From the NCBI RefSeq assembly GCF_000315625.1, contig NW_005434672.1, positions 899,374 to 963,373 of the forward strand: a DNA stretch of 64,000 bases, written 5' to 3'. Under the pieces are notes generated by a model, which saw only the letters and a program-made list of their open reading frames with translations, was not told the DNA's origin and ran no database searches. The DNA comes from Guillardia theta CCMP2712. Its lineage: Eukaryota > Protista > Cryptophyta. Position numbers and translations under genes: made by a program. Below are positions 55,939 through 63,000 of the stretch, piece after piece (position 1 is the stretch's first letter; every line of letters begins with the position of its first letter).

Positions 55939-56825
55939 TCAAAGTCTTTGCAATCGTACCTGTACAAGCAGGGAAGCTGCTGCAATGAGGGTATGAATCA
56001 CCATGTAGGCGCCTATTAGGAGCAATGGTGTGCTCCAGACCACTGAGAGAAAGACCCCATGCTGCAAGCTAGAGTCACGTGCCACCTCTCGAGCTCCGGA
56101 AGGTGTTACCTTGTCAAAATAATTCTGCGTAGAGAAGGACTCCCAGTGTGTTGACTGTCGGCGAAAGTTGAACAACAAGGAGGGGAAGGTCAAGGAAAAT
56201 CACTCACCAGAAATCTGTTGAGAGGTTCAGCCAGGTAGATACAACCCATCATGAAGCAGAAGAGCACTATCTGAATGTTGCTGTTCCTCCGCGAGAGAAT
56301 CTGATGAGGAAAAGTCAGCTGAAGTTGGCCAACGCCTCTGAATGTTACCGCTAGCAGTAGCATCGTGAAGTGGAATATACCCAACGCAATAATCCATGTC
56401 TCAGTCCACTCCACAGCCGAAACAAACCCCTTCACGCTATTCTTGAATTGCATCCACTTGTTTGAAGGGAGTTAGAACCAGATCATTTCAGCAAGGCGAC
56501 AAATGAGTTGAGAAGACATGGATAAGGTGAACGAGCATGAAGACGATCGATCAGGCGCATATTTGCTGTCATCAACCATGAATACCTGGCTTGGATTCGC
56601 CGATAGGTCAGCCATATCGAACTCCGATGGGTCGCCAAAGTAAAACATCTTTCCAGGCTTTGGCTTTGTAGGAATGGCACCTAATGAAAGGATGAGGGAG
56701 AAGAGGCGGAGGTGAGGGCATGTACCTGTGACATTGAACGCTGACTTAAAGATCTCAATCGCTTCGTTGCTCGCGTTCGTCAGCGACTCCCACATGTCTT
56801 CCAGCATTCCCTTCTCCGCCCCCAT
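55939..56825 (-). CDS. TMEM18: Transmembrane protein 18 homologue (multi-exon)
   Basis: Family motifs AVEWTETWIIALGIFH, YLAEPLN, HWESFSTQNYFDK|HGVFLSVVWSTPLL. Confidence 0.85.
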
Positions 56826-56965
56826 GACGGGAGCACGCTCATCCCCTCGTCCCCTCTCAGGCCTGTATCATCCCCCTCTTTTCCCTGCCGTCCCAATTCG
56901 ATGAAATGTGTGGGAGGGAGAGGCGAGAAGCAAGCCATGCAGACAAGCAGCGCTGACACGATCGC

Positions 56966-57076
56966 GAGCTAGCAGTCTTCAGAAGCATCTCATGCCAGAC
57001 GGGAGCTAGCAGTCTTCAGAAGCATCTCATGCCAGACGGGAGCTAGCAGTCTTCAGAAGCATCTCATGCCAGACGG
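56966..57076 (+). repeat. Three perfect tandem copies of a 37-bp unit
   Basis: GAGCTAGCAGTCTTCAGAAGCATCTCATGCCAGACGG at 56966, 57003 and 57040, with no spacers. Confidence 0.95.
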
Positions 57077-57129
57077 CACATCATTGAGAAGAAAACGACG
57101 AGGGGGGAGGTGTAGAGGTCGGAAGATCG

Positions 57130-59338
57130 ATGAGGTCGATCCAATTTTTATTGGGCCTTCTGATTCTACAGCCATGGCTCGTGACGACGGCGTTTGTCAC
57201 GTATGAGGCATCGGCTTCCTTCCCCTTGTGCTCCAACTTCTCCCTTGAGAGCAATCATCAGATCGGCTTCTTGTTCGGGTATGTCGAGAACGACGGCGCC
57301 AAGAACCGTACGTCACCTTACCTTCCTCTCAATGCGACGTGTCAATGTACATCGCCGCACAGTCTCTTCATGAATTTCTCCGCTCAGACGCTGGATACAT
57401 ACAATGCTGTGGTTGCGCTGTTTGAAGCAGGGAAAGGATCTCAGAATTCAACTTTCAAAGGGAACGCCACTGTGAGCAACCATTCCAGCCCGACCAATCT
57501 CACTCACTCCAACGCCTCCGCCTCGACCACCAACTTGACTAACGTGAATGTCACTAACGTGAATGTCAGTGAAGCAAACAGCAGCGTTACAATGGACATG
57601 AATGCTTCTTCGAGCTCCTCCTCCAACCTCACGAGCAACACGAGCTCTAGTACGAATGTTTCGACGAGATCCTTTGAGGGCTGGGGCAGAAAGCCGGGGC
57701 GGGTGTTGACCTCCACGTCGATTCCATTGATCAATGTCTCATGCTTGAGCCCGTCGGATGCGGAAGCACTTTGTAAGAAGCTGAGCATTGCGAACGAGTA
57801 ATGATGTCCTGCCGTCTTCCAGTCCACTGATTGCTTGTCTGCAGATACTGTCCCTCAGCGACAGACATAGTGATTGTAGTGCAGAAGAACATTGTGGTGA
57901 TCAACAACATCACTAAAGTCGTTGTGCAAGCAGCCACAAACAATGATTTCGTAACGGCGCTACAAAAGGAGATCGCAGCATTCCTGACTTCATTCTCCTC
58001 GTCAACATTCTTCATCGGCAGCAACATCGGCATAGGAAAAGCAGCCAACATAGTACTCTGGCTCGGATTTTTCATTTTCCTTGCTGGTGCAATTTTATTG
58101 TGAGAGCATGCAGGTGTCAAGGGTGGTCATAGGCTAACATGGAGCCTCAGGGAATGGATTGGAACGAGGACGAAGAAATTCAAGCTTCAACTGCTGATTC
58201 TCGTCTTGAACTGCAAGTAGTGATGGACCTTTTCCGAATCTCATCTCTCAACAGGCACGATGAGCATGCTGGGCTACTTGACCATGGCTTTCGGTCACGG
58301 AAGATCGACACACTTCAAGGTGACGTGGCGGGTGAACGAGGCGGCTAAAGCTGATGAGGGCTCAGGTCATGTTCAACGCAACTCGCAATGAGTCCAGCGG
58401 GCAACTCTACTTCATAGGCTCCCCCATCCGCCAGTCAGACGTCTGCTGATCATGACTCGCAGCCTCTCCCAGGGCTCACTGTTGGTGCAGGTGCCTCCTG
58501 TCTTCTACTCGCGGTACATCATGTGGCTCTTCACCACTCCCTCCCCCATCTTCCTCCTCTGCCACTTCGCCAACGCGCTGGAGACTTTCATGGGATCTGC
58601 GGTGATAGCAAGGAGGAGAGCTTGTTGGGAGCTGACGAGAATGCAGGCGCTCGACTGGATGATGATCTTGTGCGGGATGGCTGCGATCTATGTGAAGGTG
58701 AACAATAAATCGACGATGACCGTATACTGAAGTTTGAGATGCAGCAAAGATCCGCAGATTTCGCTCATGCAGATGTTGCACTTGTCGAGTGTGTGGGATG
58801 CAGCAACACGAATGTGATCGTGTGGGTTCTGTTTGCTATCGCAAGTCTCTTCTTCGTCGTTCTCCTCTATCGGGTGCGAGATTTCCACTTCCATGAAGGT
58901 TTGCGATGCTGATAGGCAGCGATAAAGTTGATTGTTATTGGAGAGCGATCAACGCTTGAAATCGACAAGAAGCTGGTACGTCTCTTCATGAGATTTCCTG
59001 CGCTGCTTCTGACGAGCATCAAGGCTTATCGCCGACTGCTTCTGTTTGTGATGATCACCTGGAGCGCGTAACTTAGTTGTCTCGTGCTCCCTGGGCTCTC
59101 ACACATTCCTCCATGTCAGGTTCCCGATCCTCTGGTTCTTCAGCGACAAAGGGTTCGGTCTGATGCCTTCAGTGAGCCCTCGGATGTGGGTGAGGAGGCG
59201 AGAGGTTTGACTGGCCGGCAGGACTGGGAGGTTCTGCTGTACGTCATCCTGGACGTAGTGGCAAAGATCGGGTTTGCGGTCCTCTACCTGTACGAGCTGA
59301 GGTCCTTGCGGTGGAGGAAGAGACTCTCATGTGAGTGA
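57130..59338 (+). CDS. Microbial (type-1) rhodopsin with signal peptide and ~290-aa N-glycosylated N-terminal ectodomain; about 10 exons; C-terminal tail may continue to ~59900
   Basis: Spliced helices: A ANIVLWLGFFIFLAGAILL; B TMSMLGYLTMAFGHG; C FYSRYIMWLFTTPSPIFLL; D ALDWMMILCGMAA; E WVLFAIASLFFVVLLY; F LLLFVMITWSAFPILWFFSDKGFG; G WEVLLYVILDVVAKIGFAVLY, with the retinal Lys in DxxAK. Confidence 0.92.
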
Positions 59339-60092
59339 AGAGAGAGGTCATGATCAAGTCCGAGGAGAGGAGGACGAGGACTGTGAAGAATGTGGTGAAC
59401 GAGGGCACGAGCACGGTTCGAAGAGAGTGCTAGAAGGAGGGGTAGCACAACGACAGTGGAGCTGGAGCAACAGCAGCAGAAAAGAGGAGCAGGAGCAAGG
59501 AGGGGGATAGGGGATGACGGTAAGGATGACGATACGGCAGATCAAGAGAACATATCCAAGGTGAACGTGAAGACTGAAGTCCCAGCAGAAGATGGAGGAG
59601 CCTCGTCCATGTCGAGGTCTTGCATGCTGACCTGTTTAAGTCTTTTCTCCCCTCCTCCCCTTCCTCACTCTTCTCATCTCTTCTCCCTCCATTTCTACTC
59701 GTGCAGTCCGCTTCCTTACATCCTCTCCTCTGTCCTCCATTCTCCCCTCCCCTCTCTCTGTCCTCCGCTCTCCTGACGTCAATCTGCAGTGGCCGACATT
59801 CGGCGTTGACGTCAACGTCGTCCAAGCAGAGGAAGCAGGCAAGACGAGAGCGACAAGCTCGGCAAGTGAATCAGCTGGAGAATATCGGAAACGACTAGCA
59901 ACTTGTAAATTATTACGTGCAAGATGTTTATATGACATGAGTAAAGATGTGCAGTTGTATGATTACAGAGCACGTGAAGTGGGAGTGACTTCGATGTTGC
60001 AACCAGAGGAGTGATTTCATGTTACAATCTTTGCAGTATTTCTATGTTACAACCAGAGAGTGAACTTGTCTTATACGTGATGACAAGAATTC

Positions 60093-63000
60093 TCACGTTT
60101 TATCTTCTCTCGAACTTGATCGTCGTGAGAAGTCGATAGGGGAGGCTGGTGAGCCGAAGTGGCTGCCAAAGGCAAGGGAGGAAGGCCTCTTGGAGAGGAA
60201 GGTGAGGGAGCGAGGAAAGAGGGAGAAGAAGATCACAATAGCGGGAATTGCAGCTAAGCAAGTTGCCACAGCGATCTGGAAATCGAGATGAGAGGGAGGA
60301 GAGGAGGAGAGGAGGAGGGGAGGAGGGGAGGAGAGGACGAGAGGAGGAGAGGAGGAGAGGAGGAGATTAGAAAAGATCATGTTGACGTGGAGAAGAAGAG
60401 AAAAATGAGAGAATCGTCAAGAGGGAGATAAGAGTGAGGAAGAGAGAGGTATAGAATTATGGTTAACTCACTGGGATAGCAGTGTTCACTTGGCTTGAGC
60501 TGCTCAGGGATGAAGACTTGTTGGCCATCTCAACAACTACATCGTCAGCTTGCAACTGGAGTGAAAATTATTCCCCACATCAAACCGAGTTTGTCAAGTC
60601 CTACCTGACGTACAATCAGATATCGAGCTGTGGGTAGAATTTCTGTCACATCAAAAGACATGTTCAGAGTTGTTACAACTGTTTGTATGAGCGACCTCTC
60701 AAACTTCCATCTGACGCCGACTTGACGAGCTTGTAGACCATCTTGACATGGGAAGTGGGATCCAGAGGAGAAGCAAGCAGCCGGAAGGTGATGGCAGTGA
60801 ACTTCAGCTTCTGTGTGTTTTCTGATGTCTGCGGTGTATACAGGTCGTTCTGAGCGAGTCAAGGGTGAGAAGGAGAGACATGTTTGATACTTCACTGTCA
60901 CCTGAGAAGATAACAAGAACTGATTCTTATCATAAAGTCCCAGCAGAGTTGTCTGAAGAAAAACAACATCAGACCTCACTTGCCTGACTTCATCTACTTG
61001 ACGTGTTTGTTTTCTCACTCACCATCGCTATCTGGACGTCCCCCAGGCTGGTGATGTTGCTCGCATTGCTCGCATTCGTCTAACAACCAAGGTCAGTTAC
61101 GTTTTCTTCTTTTCCTCTCTTCTGATCTTCTTCTGTTCACTTCTCCTCTCTTCCAACCTGCTTGACAAAAGCCAGTCCAACCTCCTTCCAGCTGTCAAGA
61201 TACCTAACAGCCCCGCCGACTCCCTTGCAGCAAAGTTATGAAGGGTAGGGAAAGAAGAGGAGAATATGGATGACAAGATGAGGAGGAGGCAGTGAAGGAG
61301 AAGCAAACCAGGTTGGTACCTGCGCAACGCACTGGCAGGCAGAGTTGATGGTTCGGGGAACGTATCCTGAAATGAGCACATGGCATTCACTTAAACAGGC
61401 AAGAGAGAGAAGGAGGGATTGCGAAAAAAAAAAGAAGAGGGAGAAAGGAGGAGAAAGGAGGAGAAAGGAGGAGAAAGGAGGAGATAGGAGGAGTCGAAGT
61501 CAAGAGGATGACGTAAGGAACAAACCCGCAGGACAAGCAGAGCAGTCGTCTTGAGCAATCCCAGATTGCATCAGCTGCATTCTCGAATGAGCGAATAAAG
61601 CAAGAACGGAGAATGCCTACAGTGACAGTGACAGCAACAGGAACGATAATAGTGTTACTTGGCACGGTGCAGATTATCATCTTAGATGAAATCTGCCCAC
61701 AAGCTTCACAATCCGGAGACTAGATGCATGTAAGTAAAGGTGGCGATGGAAGATATCAATAACCATTCGCAAGGAGCAGATCTGTCCGGCTATTTTCACT
61801 TCAACTTGAAGAAATTCATTGTTAGGATCTCCAAAGTTTTCTCTGCCAGCAGAAAAGCTCAACAGTTATTTCTTTCGAGCACTTGTTTTCACCCCACAAC
61901 AGTGAGAGGAAGCCCTCCGCCATAAGGAACAAGTGAAGGCTGCAGGTAGAGTGAGGAACATGGCACTGACCACGAAGGGAGCAAACATTTATGGTAGAGA
62001 TGGACGGACTTGCATAGTTGAACCAACACAATCTCTACGAGATGGATCAGAAGTGTGATCGAAGAAGAAGAGAAAAACAAAATGAACTCAGACAAATGAA
62101 GAAAGAATGTACCGATTCAGTAGGCACACAAGTCACGGATGGAAGGCCAACAACCTGTTCTTTCAAGTCATGATGTTGCGGTCAGAAAAGAAAAGAGAAC
62201 ACACGGGAGTGAGACTGACTGGATGTTGAGATCCAAATCCGCCAGGAACGACACATGTTATCGTAGAGCTTGAAAGGACCTCTCGACAGAATCAGCATGA
62301 CGAATGAAGTCATCTGCGTTCACTTTGATGTTTGTACAAGAACTTGAGCCAATAGACACCAACATCTGGTTTTGCTGATTCTGGATCCCTTGCAAACATC
62401 TGCCCACCATGGTAATGGTCTGACCACCTTTGCTCTTTCAACTCAGATGAAACCACGGGAGAAAGAAACATTCCTACCATCTGTGGGACCAACGACAGGA
62501 TAAATGTAGAGAAGATTTTGAGGACTCGATGCGCAACTCGTTGCAGTCAACGTGAGAGAATCCTTTGAGTCCAGTCAATGAACATCGAAACGCAACAATC
62601 TGACGCATCTAACTGACTTGAGACTCCTGACAAGGTCCAGAGATACACTTGAGAGTACCAAAGCAAGAAGTACCACTGCAATGATATCACAAGTCTCGAA
62701 CATGGTAATGAGCCGAAAGGTCGGCGTGATAAAAAATACAATCAAGTGTACATACCTGATGGACCAGAACGCACTGTCATTGACTCGCAGATCAAAATTC
62801 ACAACACCAAATTTCGAGACTGCGGAGATGAGATTGAAGCTGTTGGAACACGAGGACAACTTTGCATTGTCGTCTGCAAGGCTCCAACTTGGCAATGCGA
62901 TAGTAGCAGTACAATCCCACGGCCTCACTTCTGTTATAGTCAGAGTTCCAGTGGGACAAACATCTGAACAAGAGCAATAGTCGAAAATGTACTGTCGCAT

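What the first reader, a model, noticed from the sequence alone, without database searches (positions are those of the whole stretch)
57130..59338. Receptor-like microbial rhodopsin with a large glycosylated, Cys-containing ectodomain
Seen: two short GT-AG introns (57798-57844, 58100-58150) and a GC-AG intron join a 223-aa first exon in frame to a complete 7-TM rhodopsin. The ~290-aa N-terminal part has a signal peptide, 6 Cys and about 19 N-x-S/T sequons in an Asn/Ser/Thr-rich stalk. The extended B-C loop has two more sequons. Known: type-1 rhodopsins normally have short extracellular N-termini, and characterised fusions such as enzymerhodopsins and channelrhodopsin tails are mostly cytoplasmic. 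Inference: a potentially undescribed class combining light sensing with an extracellular adhesion, ligand-binding or positioning module.
Basis: partly seen in the sequence, partly recalled or inferred. Interest (0 to 1): 0.85.

Follow-up and report, generated by a model that had tools for sequence, protein, structure and literature searches.

The report
Rhodopsin with a large glycosylated ectodomain
The cryptophyte alga Guillardia theta expresses a retinal light receptor whose outward-facing end carries an unusually large, sugar-coated, cysteine-containing domain that is kept in a few relatives. The gene was already catalogued, but this layout and its purpose have not been described.

Summary
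RNA-run contigs from three studies, an MMETSP transcript and a published RT-PCR design show one mRNA (57047-59962, + strand). It has 14 exons and 13 introns (12 GT-AG, 1 GC-AG) and a CDS at 57130-59898 encoding 617 aa.

The protein has these parts:
- a signal peptide;
- a 266-aa ectodomain with 6 Cys and 19 N-x-S/T sequons (shuffles give 7.7±2.2);
- a Pfam-positive 7-TM rhodopsin (residues 289-546);
- a 70-aa cytoplasmic tail.

The stop at 59338 belongs only to a minor isoform that retains intron 12.

The locus is GUITHDRAFT_99631 (Gt_099631) of Guillardia theta. It is annotated and was listed in a 2020 expression survey. The NCBI model mis-splices helix A and half of helix B, and no paper I could search discusses the ectodomain.

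The same layout occurs in Hanusia phi and in at least four environmental homologues. In some of these the ectodomain and helices lie in one uninterrupted ORF. The juxtamembrane module has three invariant Cys and an invariant NN(I/V)T sequon, and is as conserved as the helices.

The core keeps Lys216 and Asp212 but has Met/Thr/Ser at Asp85 and Leu/Val at Asp96, so it is not a proton pump. The ectodomain has no detectable relatives, and AlphaFold2 failed on it. Its function (anchoring, oligomerisation or ligand binding) remains inference.

Verdict: a new variant of a known kind.

The parts
57047..59962 (+). Transcript as seen in RNA data. The 5' end is not fixed, because contigs start at 57047 or 57102, inside or just after a 37-nt tandem repeat. 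The poly(A) site is near 59962.
   Evidence: contigs of 1945-1995 nt from runs X6, X7 and X9 (three studies) cover all exons. Raw 3'-tag RNA reads of X24 lie with first mates on + and show a poly(A) loose end at 59962.
57130..59898 (+). CDS of 617 codons plus TAG, in 14 exons: 57130-57797, 57845-58099, 58151-58212, 58255-58319, 58366-58440, 58491-58601, 58647-58697, 58745-58873, 58928-58975, 59024-59067, 59120-59171, 59222-59330, 59541-59616, 59790-59898.
   Evidence: The translation is identical to the MMETSP transcript ORF P0004. There is an in-frame stop upstream of the ATG. The ATG and the C-terminus equal the primer sites for XM_005841908.1.
57130..57195 (+). Predicted signal peptide, residues 1-22 (MRSIQFLLGLLILQPWLVTTA|F).
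   Evidence: Hydropathy and sequence. The cleavage site is inferred, not predicted by a dedicated tool.
57196..57426 (+). N-terminal ectodomain module, residues 23-99, with Cys34, Cys71 and Cys73. The motif PLNA(T/S)CxC is conserved in all homologues that reach this far.
   Evidence: Identity to Hanusia phi is 61%.
57427..57675 (+). Asn/Ser/Thr-rich stalk, residues 100-182, with 13 sequons and no Cys. Its length and sequence vary between homologues. It contains a 15-nt tandem duplication at 57538-57568 (TNVNV TNVNV).
57676..58040 (+). Juxtamembrane ectodomain module, residues 183-288, spanning intron 1. Cys205, Cys215 and Cys225 are invariant, as is the sequon N243-N244-x-T246. An amphipathic segment LQ(K/R)EI(A/N)AFL follows, then SNxGIG leads into helix A.
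   Evidence: Identity is 84% to Hanusia and 40-46% to environmental homologues, equal to or above most helices.
58041..59302 (+). 7-TM microbial rhodopsin core, residues 289-547, in exons 2-12.
   Evidence: Pfam PF01036 at 94.1 bits, E 1.1e-26, residues 289-546. The best solved relatives are haloarchaeal bacteriorhodopsins, E about 1e-15. Seven hydrophobic segments are found.
58213..58254 (+). GC-AG intron (intron 3, 42 nt).
   Evidence: Joint 58212/58255 in contigs of three RNA runs. Ends are GCAAGT..CAACAG.
58296..58499 (+). Extended extracellular B-C loop, residues 343-378, with sequons N354 and N358. The N358-type sequon is kept in homologues.
58512..58556 (+). Helix C motif R383-Y-I-M386-W-L-F-T390-T-P...L397. 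By BR numbering: Arg82 kept, Asp85 to Met, Thr89 kept, Asp96 to Leu.
   Evidence: HMMER alignment to solved bacteriorhodopsins and the residue table.
59252..59266 (+). Helix G D531-V-V-A-K535, giving the Asp212 and Lys216 (retinal Schiff base) equivalents.
59303..59895 (+). Cytoplasmic tail, residues 548-617, in exons 12-14. It is basic next to the membrane, has no domain and is not conserved.
59331..59540 (+). Intron 12 (210 nt).
   Evidence: joint 59330/59541 in three contigs and 3 raw reads, with minor unspliced contigs 59316-59563 and 59328-59525..

Best explanation
This is one expressed Guillardia theta gene (GUITHDRAFT_99631 / Gt_099631). It encodes a 617-aa membrane glycoprotein built from a cleavable signal peptide, a 266-aa extracellular domain, a bacteriorhodopsin-like 7-TM retinal-binding core, and a short non-conserved cytoplasmic tail.

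The extracellular domain has three parts. The first is a small Cys-containing N-module. The second is a variable, heavily N-glycosylated Asn/Ser/Thr stalk. The third is a strongly conserved juxtamembrane module with three invariant Cys and an invariant sequon that runs straight into helix A.

Shown here: the transcript structure, the ORF, the Pfam membership, the retained Lys216/Asp212/Arg82 and retinal-pocket residues, the loss of both pump carboxylates (Asp85 to Met, Asp96 to Leu), sequon enrichment beyond composition, and conservation of the whole layout in Hanusia phi and several uncultured relatives.

Inferred mechanism:
- Retinal at Lys535 isomerises in light.
- With no carboxylate on helix C to take the Schiff-base proton and no cytoplasmic donor, the protein cannot run a BR-type outward proton pump (about 0.8).
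- It therefore acts as a photosensor or as a passive or anion-dependent transporter. My split is sensor about 0.45, channel about 0.25, anion pump about 0.15.
- The juxtamembrane module probably sits as a disulfide-stabilised, glycosylated cap on the extracellular face. The odd number of invariant Cys may link protomers.
- The glycan-coated stalk holds the N-module away from the membrane, towards the periplast or medium, for anchoring, positioning or partner binding (about 0.3 for any one of these).
For: One transcript: 13 joints, each in contigs of three RNA runs from different studies, and a poly(A) end in raw RNA reads. The spliced ORF of 617 aa is identical to MMETSP ORF P0004. The published full-length RT-PCR primers sit on this ATG and this C-terminus, and the qPCR primers lie in exons 12 and 14.

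Identity: the genome has 87,145,349 b in 669 contigs, and NCBI names P0009 GUITHDRAFT_99631 [Guillardia theta CCMP2712].

Rhodopsin core: PF01036 at 94 bits, alignments to solved BRs and the key-residue table.

Ectodomain real and selected: 19 sequons against 7.7±2.2 in shuffles. The Hanusia phi transcript carries both the ectodomain ORF and the opsin ORF. Environmental homologues P0006, P0007 and P0010 carry ectodomain plus helices in single uninterrupted ORFs. Three Cys and NN(I/V)T are invariant.

Outward face conserved: three-way identity is 32% for the juxtamembrane module and 38% for the F-G loop, against 0-17% for the cytoplasmic loops.

No enzyme or other domain in the tail.
Against: No functional data exist for this protein or any relative.

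The ectodomain fold is unknown: two AlphaFold2 runs gave mean pLDDT 46.

The residue at the Asp85 position varies (Met, Thr, Ser) and Arg82 is Leu in one homologue, so no single ion-binding geometry is conserved. This fits a sensor but proves nothing.

Phe follows both possible signal-peptide cleavage sites (TTA|F and SAS|F). In cryptophytes a Phe at that position is a hallmark of plastid-directed presequences (my own knowledge), so plasma-membrane localisation is assumed, not shown.

Glycosylation and disulfides are predicted only. The conservation comparison rests on three full-length-like sequences.
Confidence: 0.6

Rival explanations
1. Halorhodopsin-like, anion-dependent rhodopsin. A neutral residue replaces Asp85, an anion (Cl- or NO3-) serves as the Schiff-base counterion, and the protein pumps anions inward. 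The ectodomain is only a trafficking or stability appendage.
For: The helix-C triplet is T-T-L in P0005 and P0006 and S-S-V in P0010. These resemble the TSA, TSD and TSL triplets of archaeal and cyanobacterial chloride pumps (my own knowledge). Cyanobacterial chloride importers and Synechocystis halorhodopsin are among the solved relatives of P0005 at E about 1e-12 to 1e-13. Arg82 and Asp212 are kept in G. theta.
Against: The G. theta protein has Met, without a hydroxyl, at the anion-binding position, and P0010 lacks Arg82. BR, SRII and xenorhodopsin score as well or better than the chloride pumps. A mere appendage would not be conserved as strongly as the helices.
Confidence: 0.15
2. Light-gated passive ion channel: a further cryptophyte channelrhodopsin type. 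The ectodomain would form an extracellular vestibule or covalent dimer interface, as the shorter Cys-containing N-domain does in chlorophyte channelrhodopsins.
For: G. theta is rich in channelrhodopsins of two unrelated families. Helix B carries polar residues (N328, C329, T330, S332). A neutral Asp85 position is also found in anion channelrhodopsins (my own knowledge). The invariant extracellular Cys recall the inter-protomer disulfides of ChR N-domains (my own knowledge).
Against: No channelrhodopsin is among the best 60 solved relatives of either P0004 or P0005. The DTD triplet of pump-like cation channels is absent, and no helix-B glutamates are present. The nearest G. theta paralogues are only 26-31% identical over partial segments, E >= 1.5e-5.
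Confidence: 0.25
3. The protein resides in an internal membrane (ER, the plastid-surrounding ER or periplastid membrane, or a vacuole). The 'ectodomain' would then be luminal rather than exposed at the cell surface.
For: Phe follows both candidate cleavage sites of the signal peptide, and this is conserved in Hanusia. N-glycans only show passage through the ER lumen.
Against: The sequence after the Phe is acidic, Cys-containing and conserved as a folded module, unlike a transit peptide. The environmental homologues show no such Phe.
Confidence: 0.2
4. Annotation or assembly artefact: exon 1 belongs to a separate secreted-protein gene and is joined to the opsin only in chimeric contigs.
For: None found. 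The idea arises only because the 223-aa ORF ends in a stop within intron 1.
Against: The same 13 joints occur in three RNA assemblies, and the MMETSP ORF is identical. Homologues encode ectodomain plus helices A-C, or A-G, in one uninterrupted genomic ORF. RT-PCR primers spanning both ends are published.
Confidence: 0.02

Closest known systems
GUITHDRAFT_99631 / Gt_099631 (XM_005841908.1), as annotated by NCBI and listed by Konno et al. 2020 (PMC7714340)
   Same: It is the same locus with the same ATG and the same stop. The ectodomain is already part of the 602-aa NCBI model. It is counted among the 42 rhodopsin-like genes of G. theta and was taken to RT-PCR and qPCR.
   Different: The NCBI model replaces residues 293-329 (helix A and half of helix B) with an out-of-frame peptide and adds AAIK after residue 472. 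It therefore does not read as an N-out 7-TM protein. The paper's alignment starts in helix B and its text does not mention the N-terminal domain. No function is assigned.
Haloarchaeal bacteriorhodopsin and sensory rhodopsin II type cores
   Same: These are the best solved relatives (E 1e-12 to 1e-16). Kept residues are Arg82, Tyr57, Tyr83, Trp86, Thr89, Thr90, Asp115, Trp182, Pro186, Trp189, Glu204, Asp212 and Lys216.
   Different: Asp85 is Met, Asp96 is Leu, Glu194 is Lys and Tyr185 is Phe. There is a 288-residue N-terminal extension instead of a few residues. The protein is eukaryotic, with a signal peptide and predicted glycosylation.
Channelrhodopsins with N-terminal extracellular extensions (chlorophyte ChR1/ChR2/C1C2; HulaCCR1 and the mgCCR1-3 clade)
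   Same: They have a signal peptide and an extracellular N-terminal segment before helix A. Cys in that segment link protomers in ChRs (my own knowledge). HulaCCR1's extension affects trafficking.
   Different: Those extensions are at most about 90 residues. The preprint the longest among pump-like cation channels. They are not known as conserved glycosylated multi-module domains. The present core lacks both the DTD/ETD triplet and the ChR helix-B glutamates.
Halorhodopsins and cyanobacterial chloride pumps (TSA, TSD, TSL triplets)
   Same: A neutral residue sits at Asp85 and a non-carboxylate at Asp96. Relatives of this gene have T-T-L. These pumps are among the solved relatives of P0005.
   Different: G. 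theta has Met at that site and one relative lacks Arg82. The known pumps have no ectodomain.
Enzymerhodopsins and histidine-kinase rhodopsins (including the G. theta HKRs on contigs C84 and C99)
   Same: They are modular eukaryotic rhodopsins in which the opsin is fused to another domain and lacks the Asp85 carboxylate. G. theta HKRs have Gln there.
   Different: Their added domains are cytoplasmic, C-terminal and enzymatic. Here the added domain is N-terminal and extracellular and has no recognisable fold, and the tail carries no domain.
Animal adhesion and class C GPCRs (analogy only)
   Same: A large glycosylated, Cys-containing ectodomain sits ahead of a 7-TM bundle.
   Different: There is no sequence or fold relationship. 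Type-2 and GPCR folds are unrelated to PF01036, and no GAIN, Venus-flytrap or other known ectodomain is detected.

Membership tests
Microbial (type-1) rhodopsin, Pfam PF01036 | Profile match above the curated cut-off | tested here: met
   94.1 bits against a cut-off of 24.6, residues 289-546 covering profile positions 2-221 of 224.
Microbial (type-1) rhodopsin, Pfam PF01036 | Retinal-binding Lys in helix G (BR Lys216), with Asp212 four residues before it | tested here: met
   D531-V-V-A-K535 aligns to DxxxK of solved BRs. It is also present in P0005, L014 and L028.
Microbial (type-1) rhodopsin, Pfam PF01036 | Seven transmembrane helices with the N-terminus outside | tested here: met
   Seven hydrophobic segments are found. 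Arg/Lys cluster in the A-B loop, the E-F loop and the tail. Sequons lie in the N-terminal part and the B-C loop. Topology is inferred from the positive-inside rule.
Outward proton pump (BR-type DTD/DTE) | Carboxylate proton acceptor at Asp85 | tested here: not met
   Met386 in G. theta, and Thr or Ser in homologues.
Outward proton pump (BR-type DTD/DTE) | Carboxylate proton donor at Asp96 | tested here: not met
   Leu397 in G. theta, and Leu or Val in homologues.
Halorhodopsin-type anion pump | Hydroxyl or amide residue at Asp85, Ser/Thr at Thr89, and Arg82 kept | tested here: inconclusive
   Relatives have T/T and S/S, but G. theta has Met at position 85 and P0010 has Leu at position 82. Anion binding cannot be tested with these tools.
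Pump-like (bacteriorhodopsin-like) cation channelrhodopsins of cryptophytes | DTD or ETD triplet on helix C | tested here: not met
   The triplet is M-T-L. The definition of the triplet is taken from the HulaCCR1 preprint.
Chlorophyte-type channelrhodopsins and cryptophyte ACRs | Sequence kinship to solved members, and helix-B glutamates (ChR) or the ACR helix-C signature | tested here: not met
   No channelrhodopsin is among the best 60 solved relatives. Helix B has no Glu. The G. theta ACR-like paralogue L001 reads RMASWLCTCP, against SRYIMWLFTTP here. Channel activity itself is not testable here.
Enzymerhodopsin / histidine-kinase rhodopsin | Cytoplasmic C-terminal enzyme domain | tested here: not met
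   Pfam finds nothing in residues 548-617.

The most novel reading that the evidence does not exclude
The family may be a distinct class of 'ecto-rhodopsins' in which the conserved juxtamembrane module and the conserved extracellular face of the helix bundle form one working unit. Either light-driven movements of the bundle change what the ectodomain binds (light-controlled surface adhesion or positioning), or an extracellular ligand or matrix contact tunes the photocycle. One protein would then integrate light with a chemical or mechanical cue from outside the cell.
Probability: 0.15. Interest if true: 0.85.

Novelty: new variant of a known kind. Interest (0 to 1): 0.6.

Why it matters
Known domain fusions of microbial rhodopsins (cyclases, phosphodiesterases, kinases, bestrophins) and the long tails of channelrhodopsins are cytoplasmic. 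I know of no microbial rhodopsin with a large, conserved, glycosylated extracellular domain, and searches of the available literature found none.

If the domain positions, oligomerises or gates the opsin, it would add a new design principle for photoreceptors. It would also give a handle on how cryptophytes, which lack an eyespot, place their light sensors.

The core is also unusual. It has Met, Thr or Ser in place of the primary counterion while Asp212 and Lys216 are kept. That could mean unusual spectral or anion-dependent properties of interest for optogenetics.

On the practical side, the public NCBI model is mis-spliced through helix A and half of helix B. Anyone cloning from it would obtain a broken protein.

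Tried and rejected
- **Fold of the ectodomain.** AlphaFold2 was run on the full protein with a 6-sequence alignment, and on homologue P0005:1-400. Both gave mean pLDDT about 46, and the ectodomain was below 50 almost throughout. I therefore ran no fold search, since it would have been meaningless.
- **Remote relatives of the ectodomain.**
  - Pfam on exons and on the whole protein found nothing. NCBIfam found nothing.
  - phmmer of exon 1 against 1.84 billion representatives found only the protein itself, Hanusia and one spurious repeat protein.
  - The ESM Atlas feature search of residues 23-105 and 183-290 gave no usable hit.
  - A six-frame search of the G. theta genome found no paralogue of exon 1.
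- **More family members.** The metagenome pattern scan returned only a contig already in hand. Profile searches added one long homologue and a few short unnamed fragments. The look-up of encoding contigs had no record for the Hanusia protein.
- **Close paralogue of the opsin core in G. theta.** None exists; the best are 26-31% identical, E >= 1.5e-5. The roughly 510-aa open frames among the rhodopsin hits are histidine-kinase rhodopsins with C-terminal extensions, not ectodomains.
- **Phylogeny with named reference rhodopsins.** Not built. Solved-structure sequences and the paper's FASTA cannot be passed to scripts without typing long sequences, so the clade of Gt_099631 in Konno et al.'s Fig. 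1 remains unknown to me.
- **Prokaryote-style promoter and terminator scan of the 5' region.** Uninformative.
- **Exon 1 as a separate gene.** Considered and rejected; see the rival explanations.
Full report
**What is in the sequence.** The 223-aa ORF at 57130-57801 ends in a stop just inside a 47-nt GT-AG intron. The frames downstream hold rhodopsin-like pieces separated by short gaps.

I laid contigs of three RNA runs from different studies, plus raw reads of one RNA-Seq run, on 56700-60300. Contigs of 1945-1995 nt cover the locus from 57047 or 57102 to about 59960 and skip 13 segments. Twelve of these have GT..AG ends and one (58213-58254) has GC..AG. The raw 3'-end reads lie on the + strand and carry a poly(A) loose end at 59962.

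With canonical boundaries the exons are:
- 57130-57797
- 57845-58099
- 58151-58212
- 58255-58319
- 58366-58440
- 58491-58601
- 58647-58697
- 58745-58873
- 58928-58975
- 59024-59067
- 59120-59171
- 59222-59330
- 59541-59616
- 59790-59898

Together they give a 617-codon ORF ending in TAG at 59896-59898. An in-frame stop precedes the ATG.

Minor unspliced contigs exist, at depth 4.1 against 31 and 2.7 against 16.1, and would give a 558-aa protein.

**Identity of the locus.** The assembly has 87,145,349 bases in 669 contigs and at least 50 exon-level matches to the rhodopsin profile.
- A profile search returned NCBI's 'hypothetical protein GUITHDRAFT_99631 [Guillardia theta CCMP2712]', 602 aa and 94% identical.
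- An MMETSP transcript ORF of 617 aa is identical to my spliced ORF.
- Konno et al. 2020 (PMC7714340) list the gene as Gt_099631 / XM_005841908.1. Their supplementary alignment holds helices B-G of this protein.
- Their full-length RT-PCR primers are this ATG (ATGAGGTCGATCCAATTTTTATTG) and this C-terminus (...ENIGND). Their qPCR primers lie in exons 12 and 14.
- The paper says 29 of 42 genes were amplified full length and 25 were quantified. Gt_099631 is in the qPCR primer table, so I infer it was among them.
- No other paper in the library names the gene.

The NCBI model differs from the RNA-supported ORF in two places. Residues 293-329 (helix A and half of helix B) are replaced by an out-of-frame peptide, and AAIK is inserted after residue 472.

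**Anatomy of the protein.**
- Residues 1-22 look like a signal peptide.
- Residues 23-288 hold 6 Cys and 19 N-x-S/T sequons. Shuffling gives 7.7±2.2 and none of 5000 shuffles reaches 19. The reversed motif occurs 7 times.
- The stalk (residues 100-182) alone has 13 sequons, no Cys and a 15-nt tandem duplication.
- Seven hydrophobic segments follow. Pfam PF01036 matches residues 289-546 at 94 bits.
- The A-B loop, the E-F loop and the tail are rich in Arg and Lys. The B-C loop carries two sequons and the D-E loop a CxxC pair. This fits an N-terminus-out topology.
- Nothing but PF01036 is found by Pfam or NCBIfam.

**The opsin core.** The best solved relatives are haloarchaeal bacteriorhodopsins at E about 1e-15. 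For homologue P0005 the solved relatives also include cyanorhodopsin, xenorhodopsin, sensory rhodopsin II and cyanobacterial chloride pumps. No channelrhodopsin is among the best 60 in either list.

Alignment to BR gives the following:
- Kept: Arg82, Tyr83, Trp86, Thr89, Thr90, Asp115, Trp182, Pro186, Trp189, Glu204, Asp212 and Lys216.
- Changed: Asp85 to Met386, Asp96 to Leu397, Glu194 to Lys and Tyr185 to Phe.

This agrees with another first-stage note on the M-T-L triplet. Lacking both the proton acceptor and the donor, the protein should not be a BR-type pump, by established knowledge of the BR photocycle. Within G. theta it has no close paralogue. The long-ORF paralogues I inspected are histidine-kinase rhodopsins with Gln at position 85 and C-terminal kinases.

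**A family with the same layout.** phmmer of exon 1 against 1.84 billion representatives found only the protein itself and a 292-aa Hanusia phi protein, EukProt transcript 760900, ORF 1. That protein is 60% identical, keeps all six Cys, and ends where G. theta intron 2 begins. ORF 2 of the same Hanusia transcript is the next opsin piece, so the ectodomain and the opsin share one transcript there too.

Searches with the opsin part and with family profiles found environmental homologues P0005, P0006, P0007 and P0010, plus short fragments. Their contigs were fetched as L014-L017 and L028. In P0006, P0007 and P0010 the ectodomain and helices A-C, or A-G, are one uninterrupted ORF. All contigs also encode the N-module motif PLNA(S/T)CxC upstream.

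Across the family:
- Cys205, Cys215, Cys225 and the sequon N243-N244-x-T246 are invariant.
- Asp212 and Lys216 are kept wherever helix G is available.
- Position 85 is Met, Thr, Thr or Ser; position 96 is Leu or Val; position 82 is Arg, Arg or Leu.
- The stalk varies from about 25 to about 90 residues but stays sequon-rich.

The outward face is the better-conserved face:

| Region | Identity |
|---|---|
| Juxtamembrane module, G. theta vs Hanusia | 84% |
| Juxtamembrane module, three-way with two environmental homologues | 32% |
| Helix C, three-way | 32% |
| Helices D-F, three-way | 19-23% |
| Extracellular F-G loop, three-way | 38% |
| Cytoplasmic loops, three-way | 0-17% |

This rests on few sequences.

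**What it most likely is and does.** These points are shown: one expressed gene, a type-1 rhodopsin core able to bind retinal, a large secretory-pathway N-terminal domain selected for glycosylation, and conservation of the whole arrangement.

The rest is inferred. The protein is a non-pumping photoreceptor (about 0.8). The juxtamembrane module is a disulfide-stabilised, glycosylated cap continuous with helix A, possibly linking protomers. The stalk is a glycan-coated spacer, and the N-module is a distal contact site.

I cannot decide between a sensor, a channel and an anion pump. The varying residues at positions 82 and 85 and the absence of any conserved cytoplasmic element leave all three open. 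A luminal rather than cell-surface location is also possible, because a Phe follows both candidate signal-peptide cleavage sites. The downstream sequence does not look like a transit peptide, however.

**Comparison with what is known.** The closest described thing is the gene's own database entry, which hides the topology through mis-splicing and has never been discussed. Among characterised rhodopsins, N-terminal extracellular extensions reach about 80-90 residues. The HulaCCR1 preprint calls its 79-91 residues longer than in any other pump-like cation channelrhodopsin, and shows a role in trafficking. Known large fusions are cytoplasmic. Literature searches for extracellular-domain rhodopsins, for this gene and for Hanusia rhodopsins found no description of this layout. 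The library lacks most subscription journals, so this is not proof of absence.

**What failed.** Two AlphaFold2 runs gave unusable models. Atlas feature searches were blank. The metagenome scan added nothing new. I could not build a tree with named references.

**Verdict.** I rate it a new variant of a known kind, with interest 0.6.

[quoted passage not shown] If that holds, receptor-like outer faces may recur in this genome.

Noticed in passing
window 56966-57076: A perfect 37-nt tandem repeat in three copies (GAGCTAGCAGTCTTCAGAAGCATCTCATGCCAGACGG) lies just upstream of, and partly inside, the 5' leader. Each copy holds an ATG. The last one (57066) opens a 46-codon upstream ORF that overlaps the main ATG in another frame. 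RNA contigs start inside the third copy at 57047, and the depth there is raised, so the true transcription start is unresolved.
   Followed up: partly
window 57101: A one-base G insertion in the G-run of the 5' leader appears in RNA contigs of runs X7 and X9 but not X6. It could be a strain or allele difference, or a homopolymer error.
   Followed up: no
window 58041-58215 and 58916-58927: NCBI's model of GUITHDRAFT_99631 (P0009, 602 aa) uses other splice sites. These destroy helix A and half of helix B and add four residues (AAIK) after residue 472. The RNA contigs and the MMETSP ORF support the 617-aa form.
   Followed up: yes
window 56472-56838, minus strand: A neighbouring gene is transcribed divergently. 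Separate RNA contigs of 1716-1783 nt end at 56823-56838, about 210 bp from the opsin transcript's first seen base. The minus-strand ORF starts at 56825. The two genes probably share a short promoter region.
   Followed up: no
runs X16, X18-X20: Freshwater and lake metagenomes hold 5-38% of the sampled words of this locus, although G. theta is known as a marine alga. This could be a close relative, laboratory carry-over or a mislabelled sample.
   Followed up: no
L014 8775-8910 and 10230-10740: The environmental homologue's contig has (TG)n/(TA)n/(GA)n microsatellites inside the intron that splits helix C from helix D, and again downstream. An RVT_2 (retrotransposon reverse transcriptase) ORF lies about 3 kb upstream.
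   Followed up: no
L009 712-2238 (-) and L010 1507-2955 (+): Two intron-poor G. theta histidine-kinase rhodopsins have FFMQW / FFAQW on helix C, with Gln at the Asp85 position and Phe at Arg82. An H-box (SHELRTPLNS) follows directly after the opsin.
   Followed up: no
P0009 record: UniRef's automatic name for this protein begins 'G-protein coupled rece...'. That label would be misleading for a PF01036 microbial rhodopsin.
   Followed up: no
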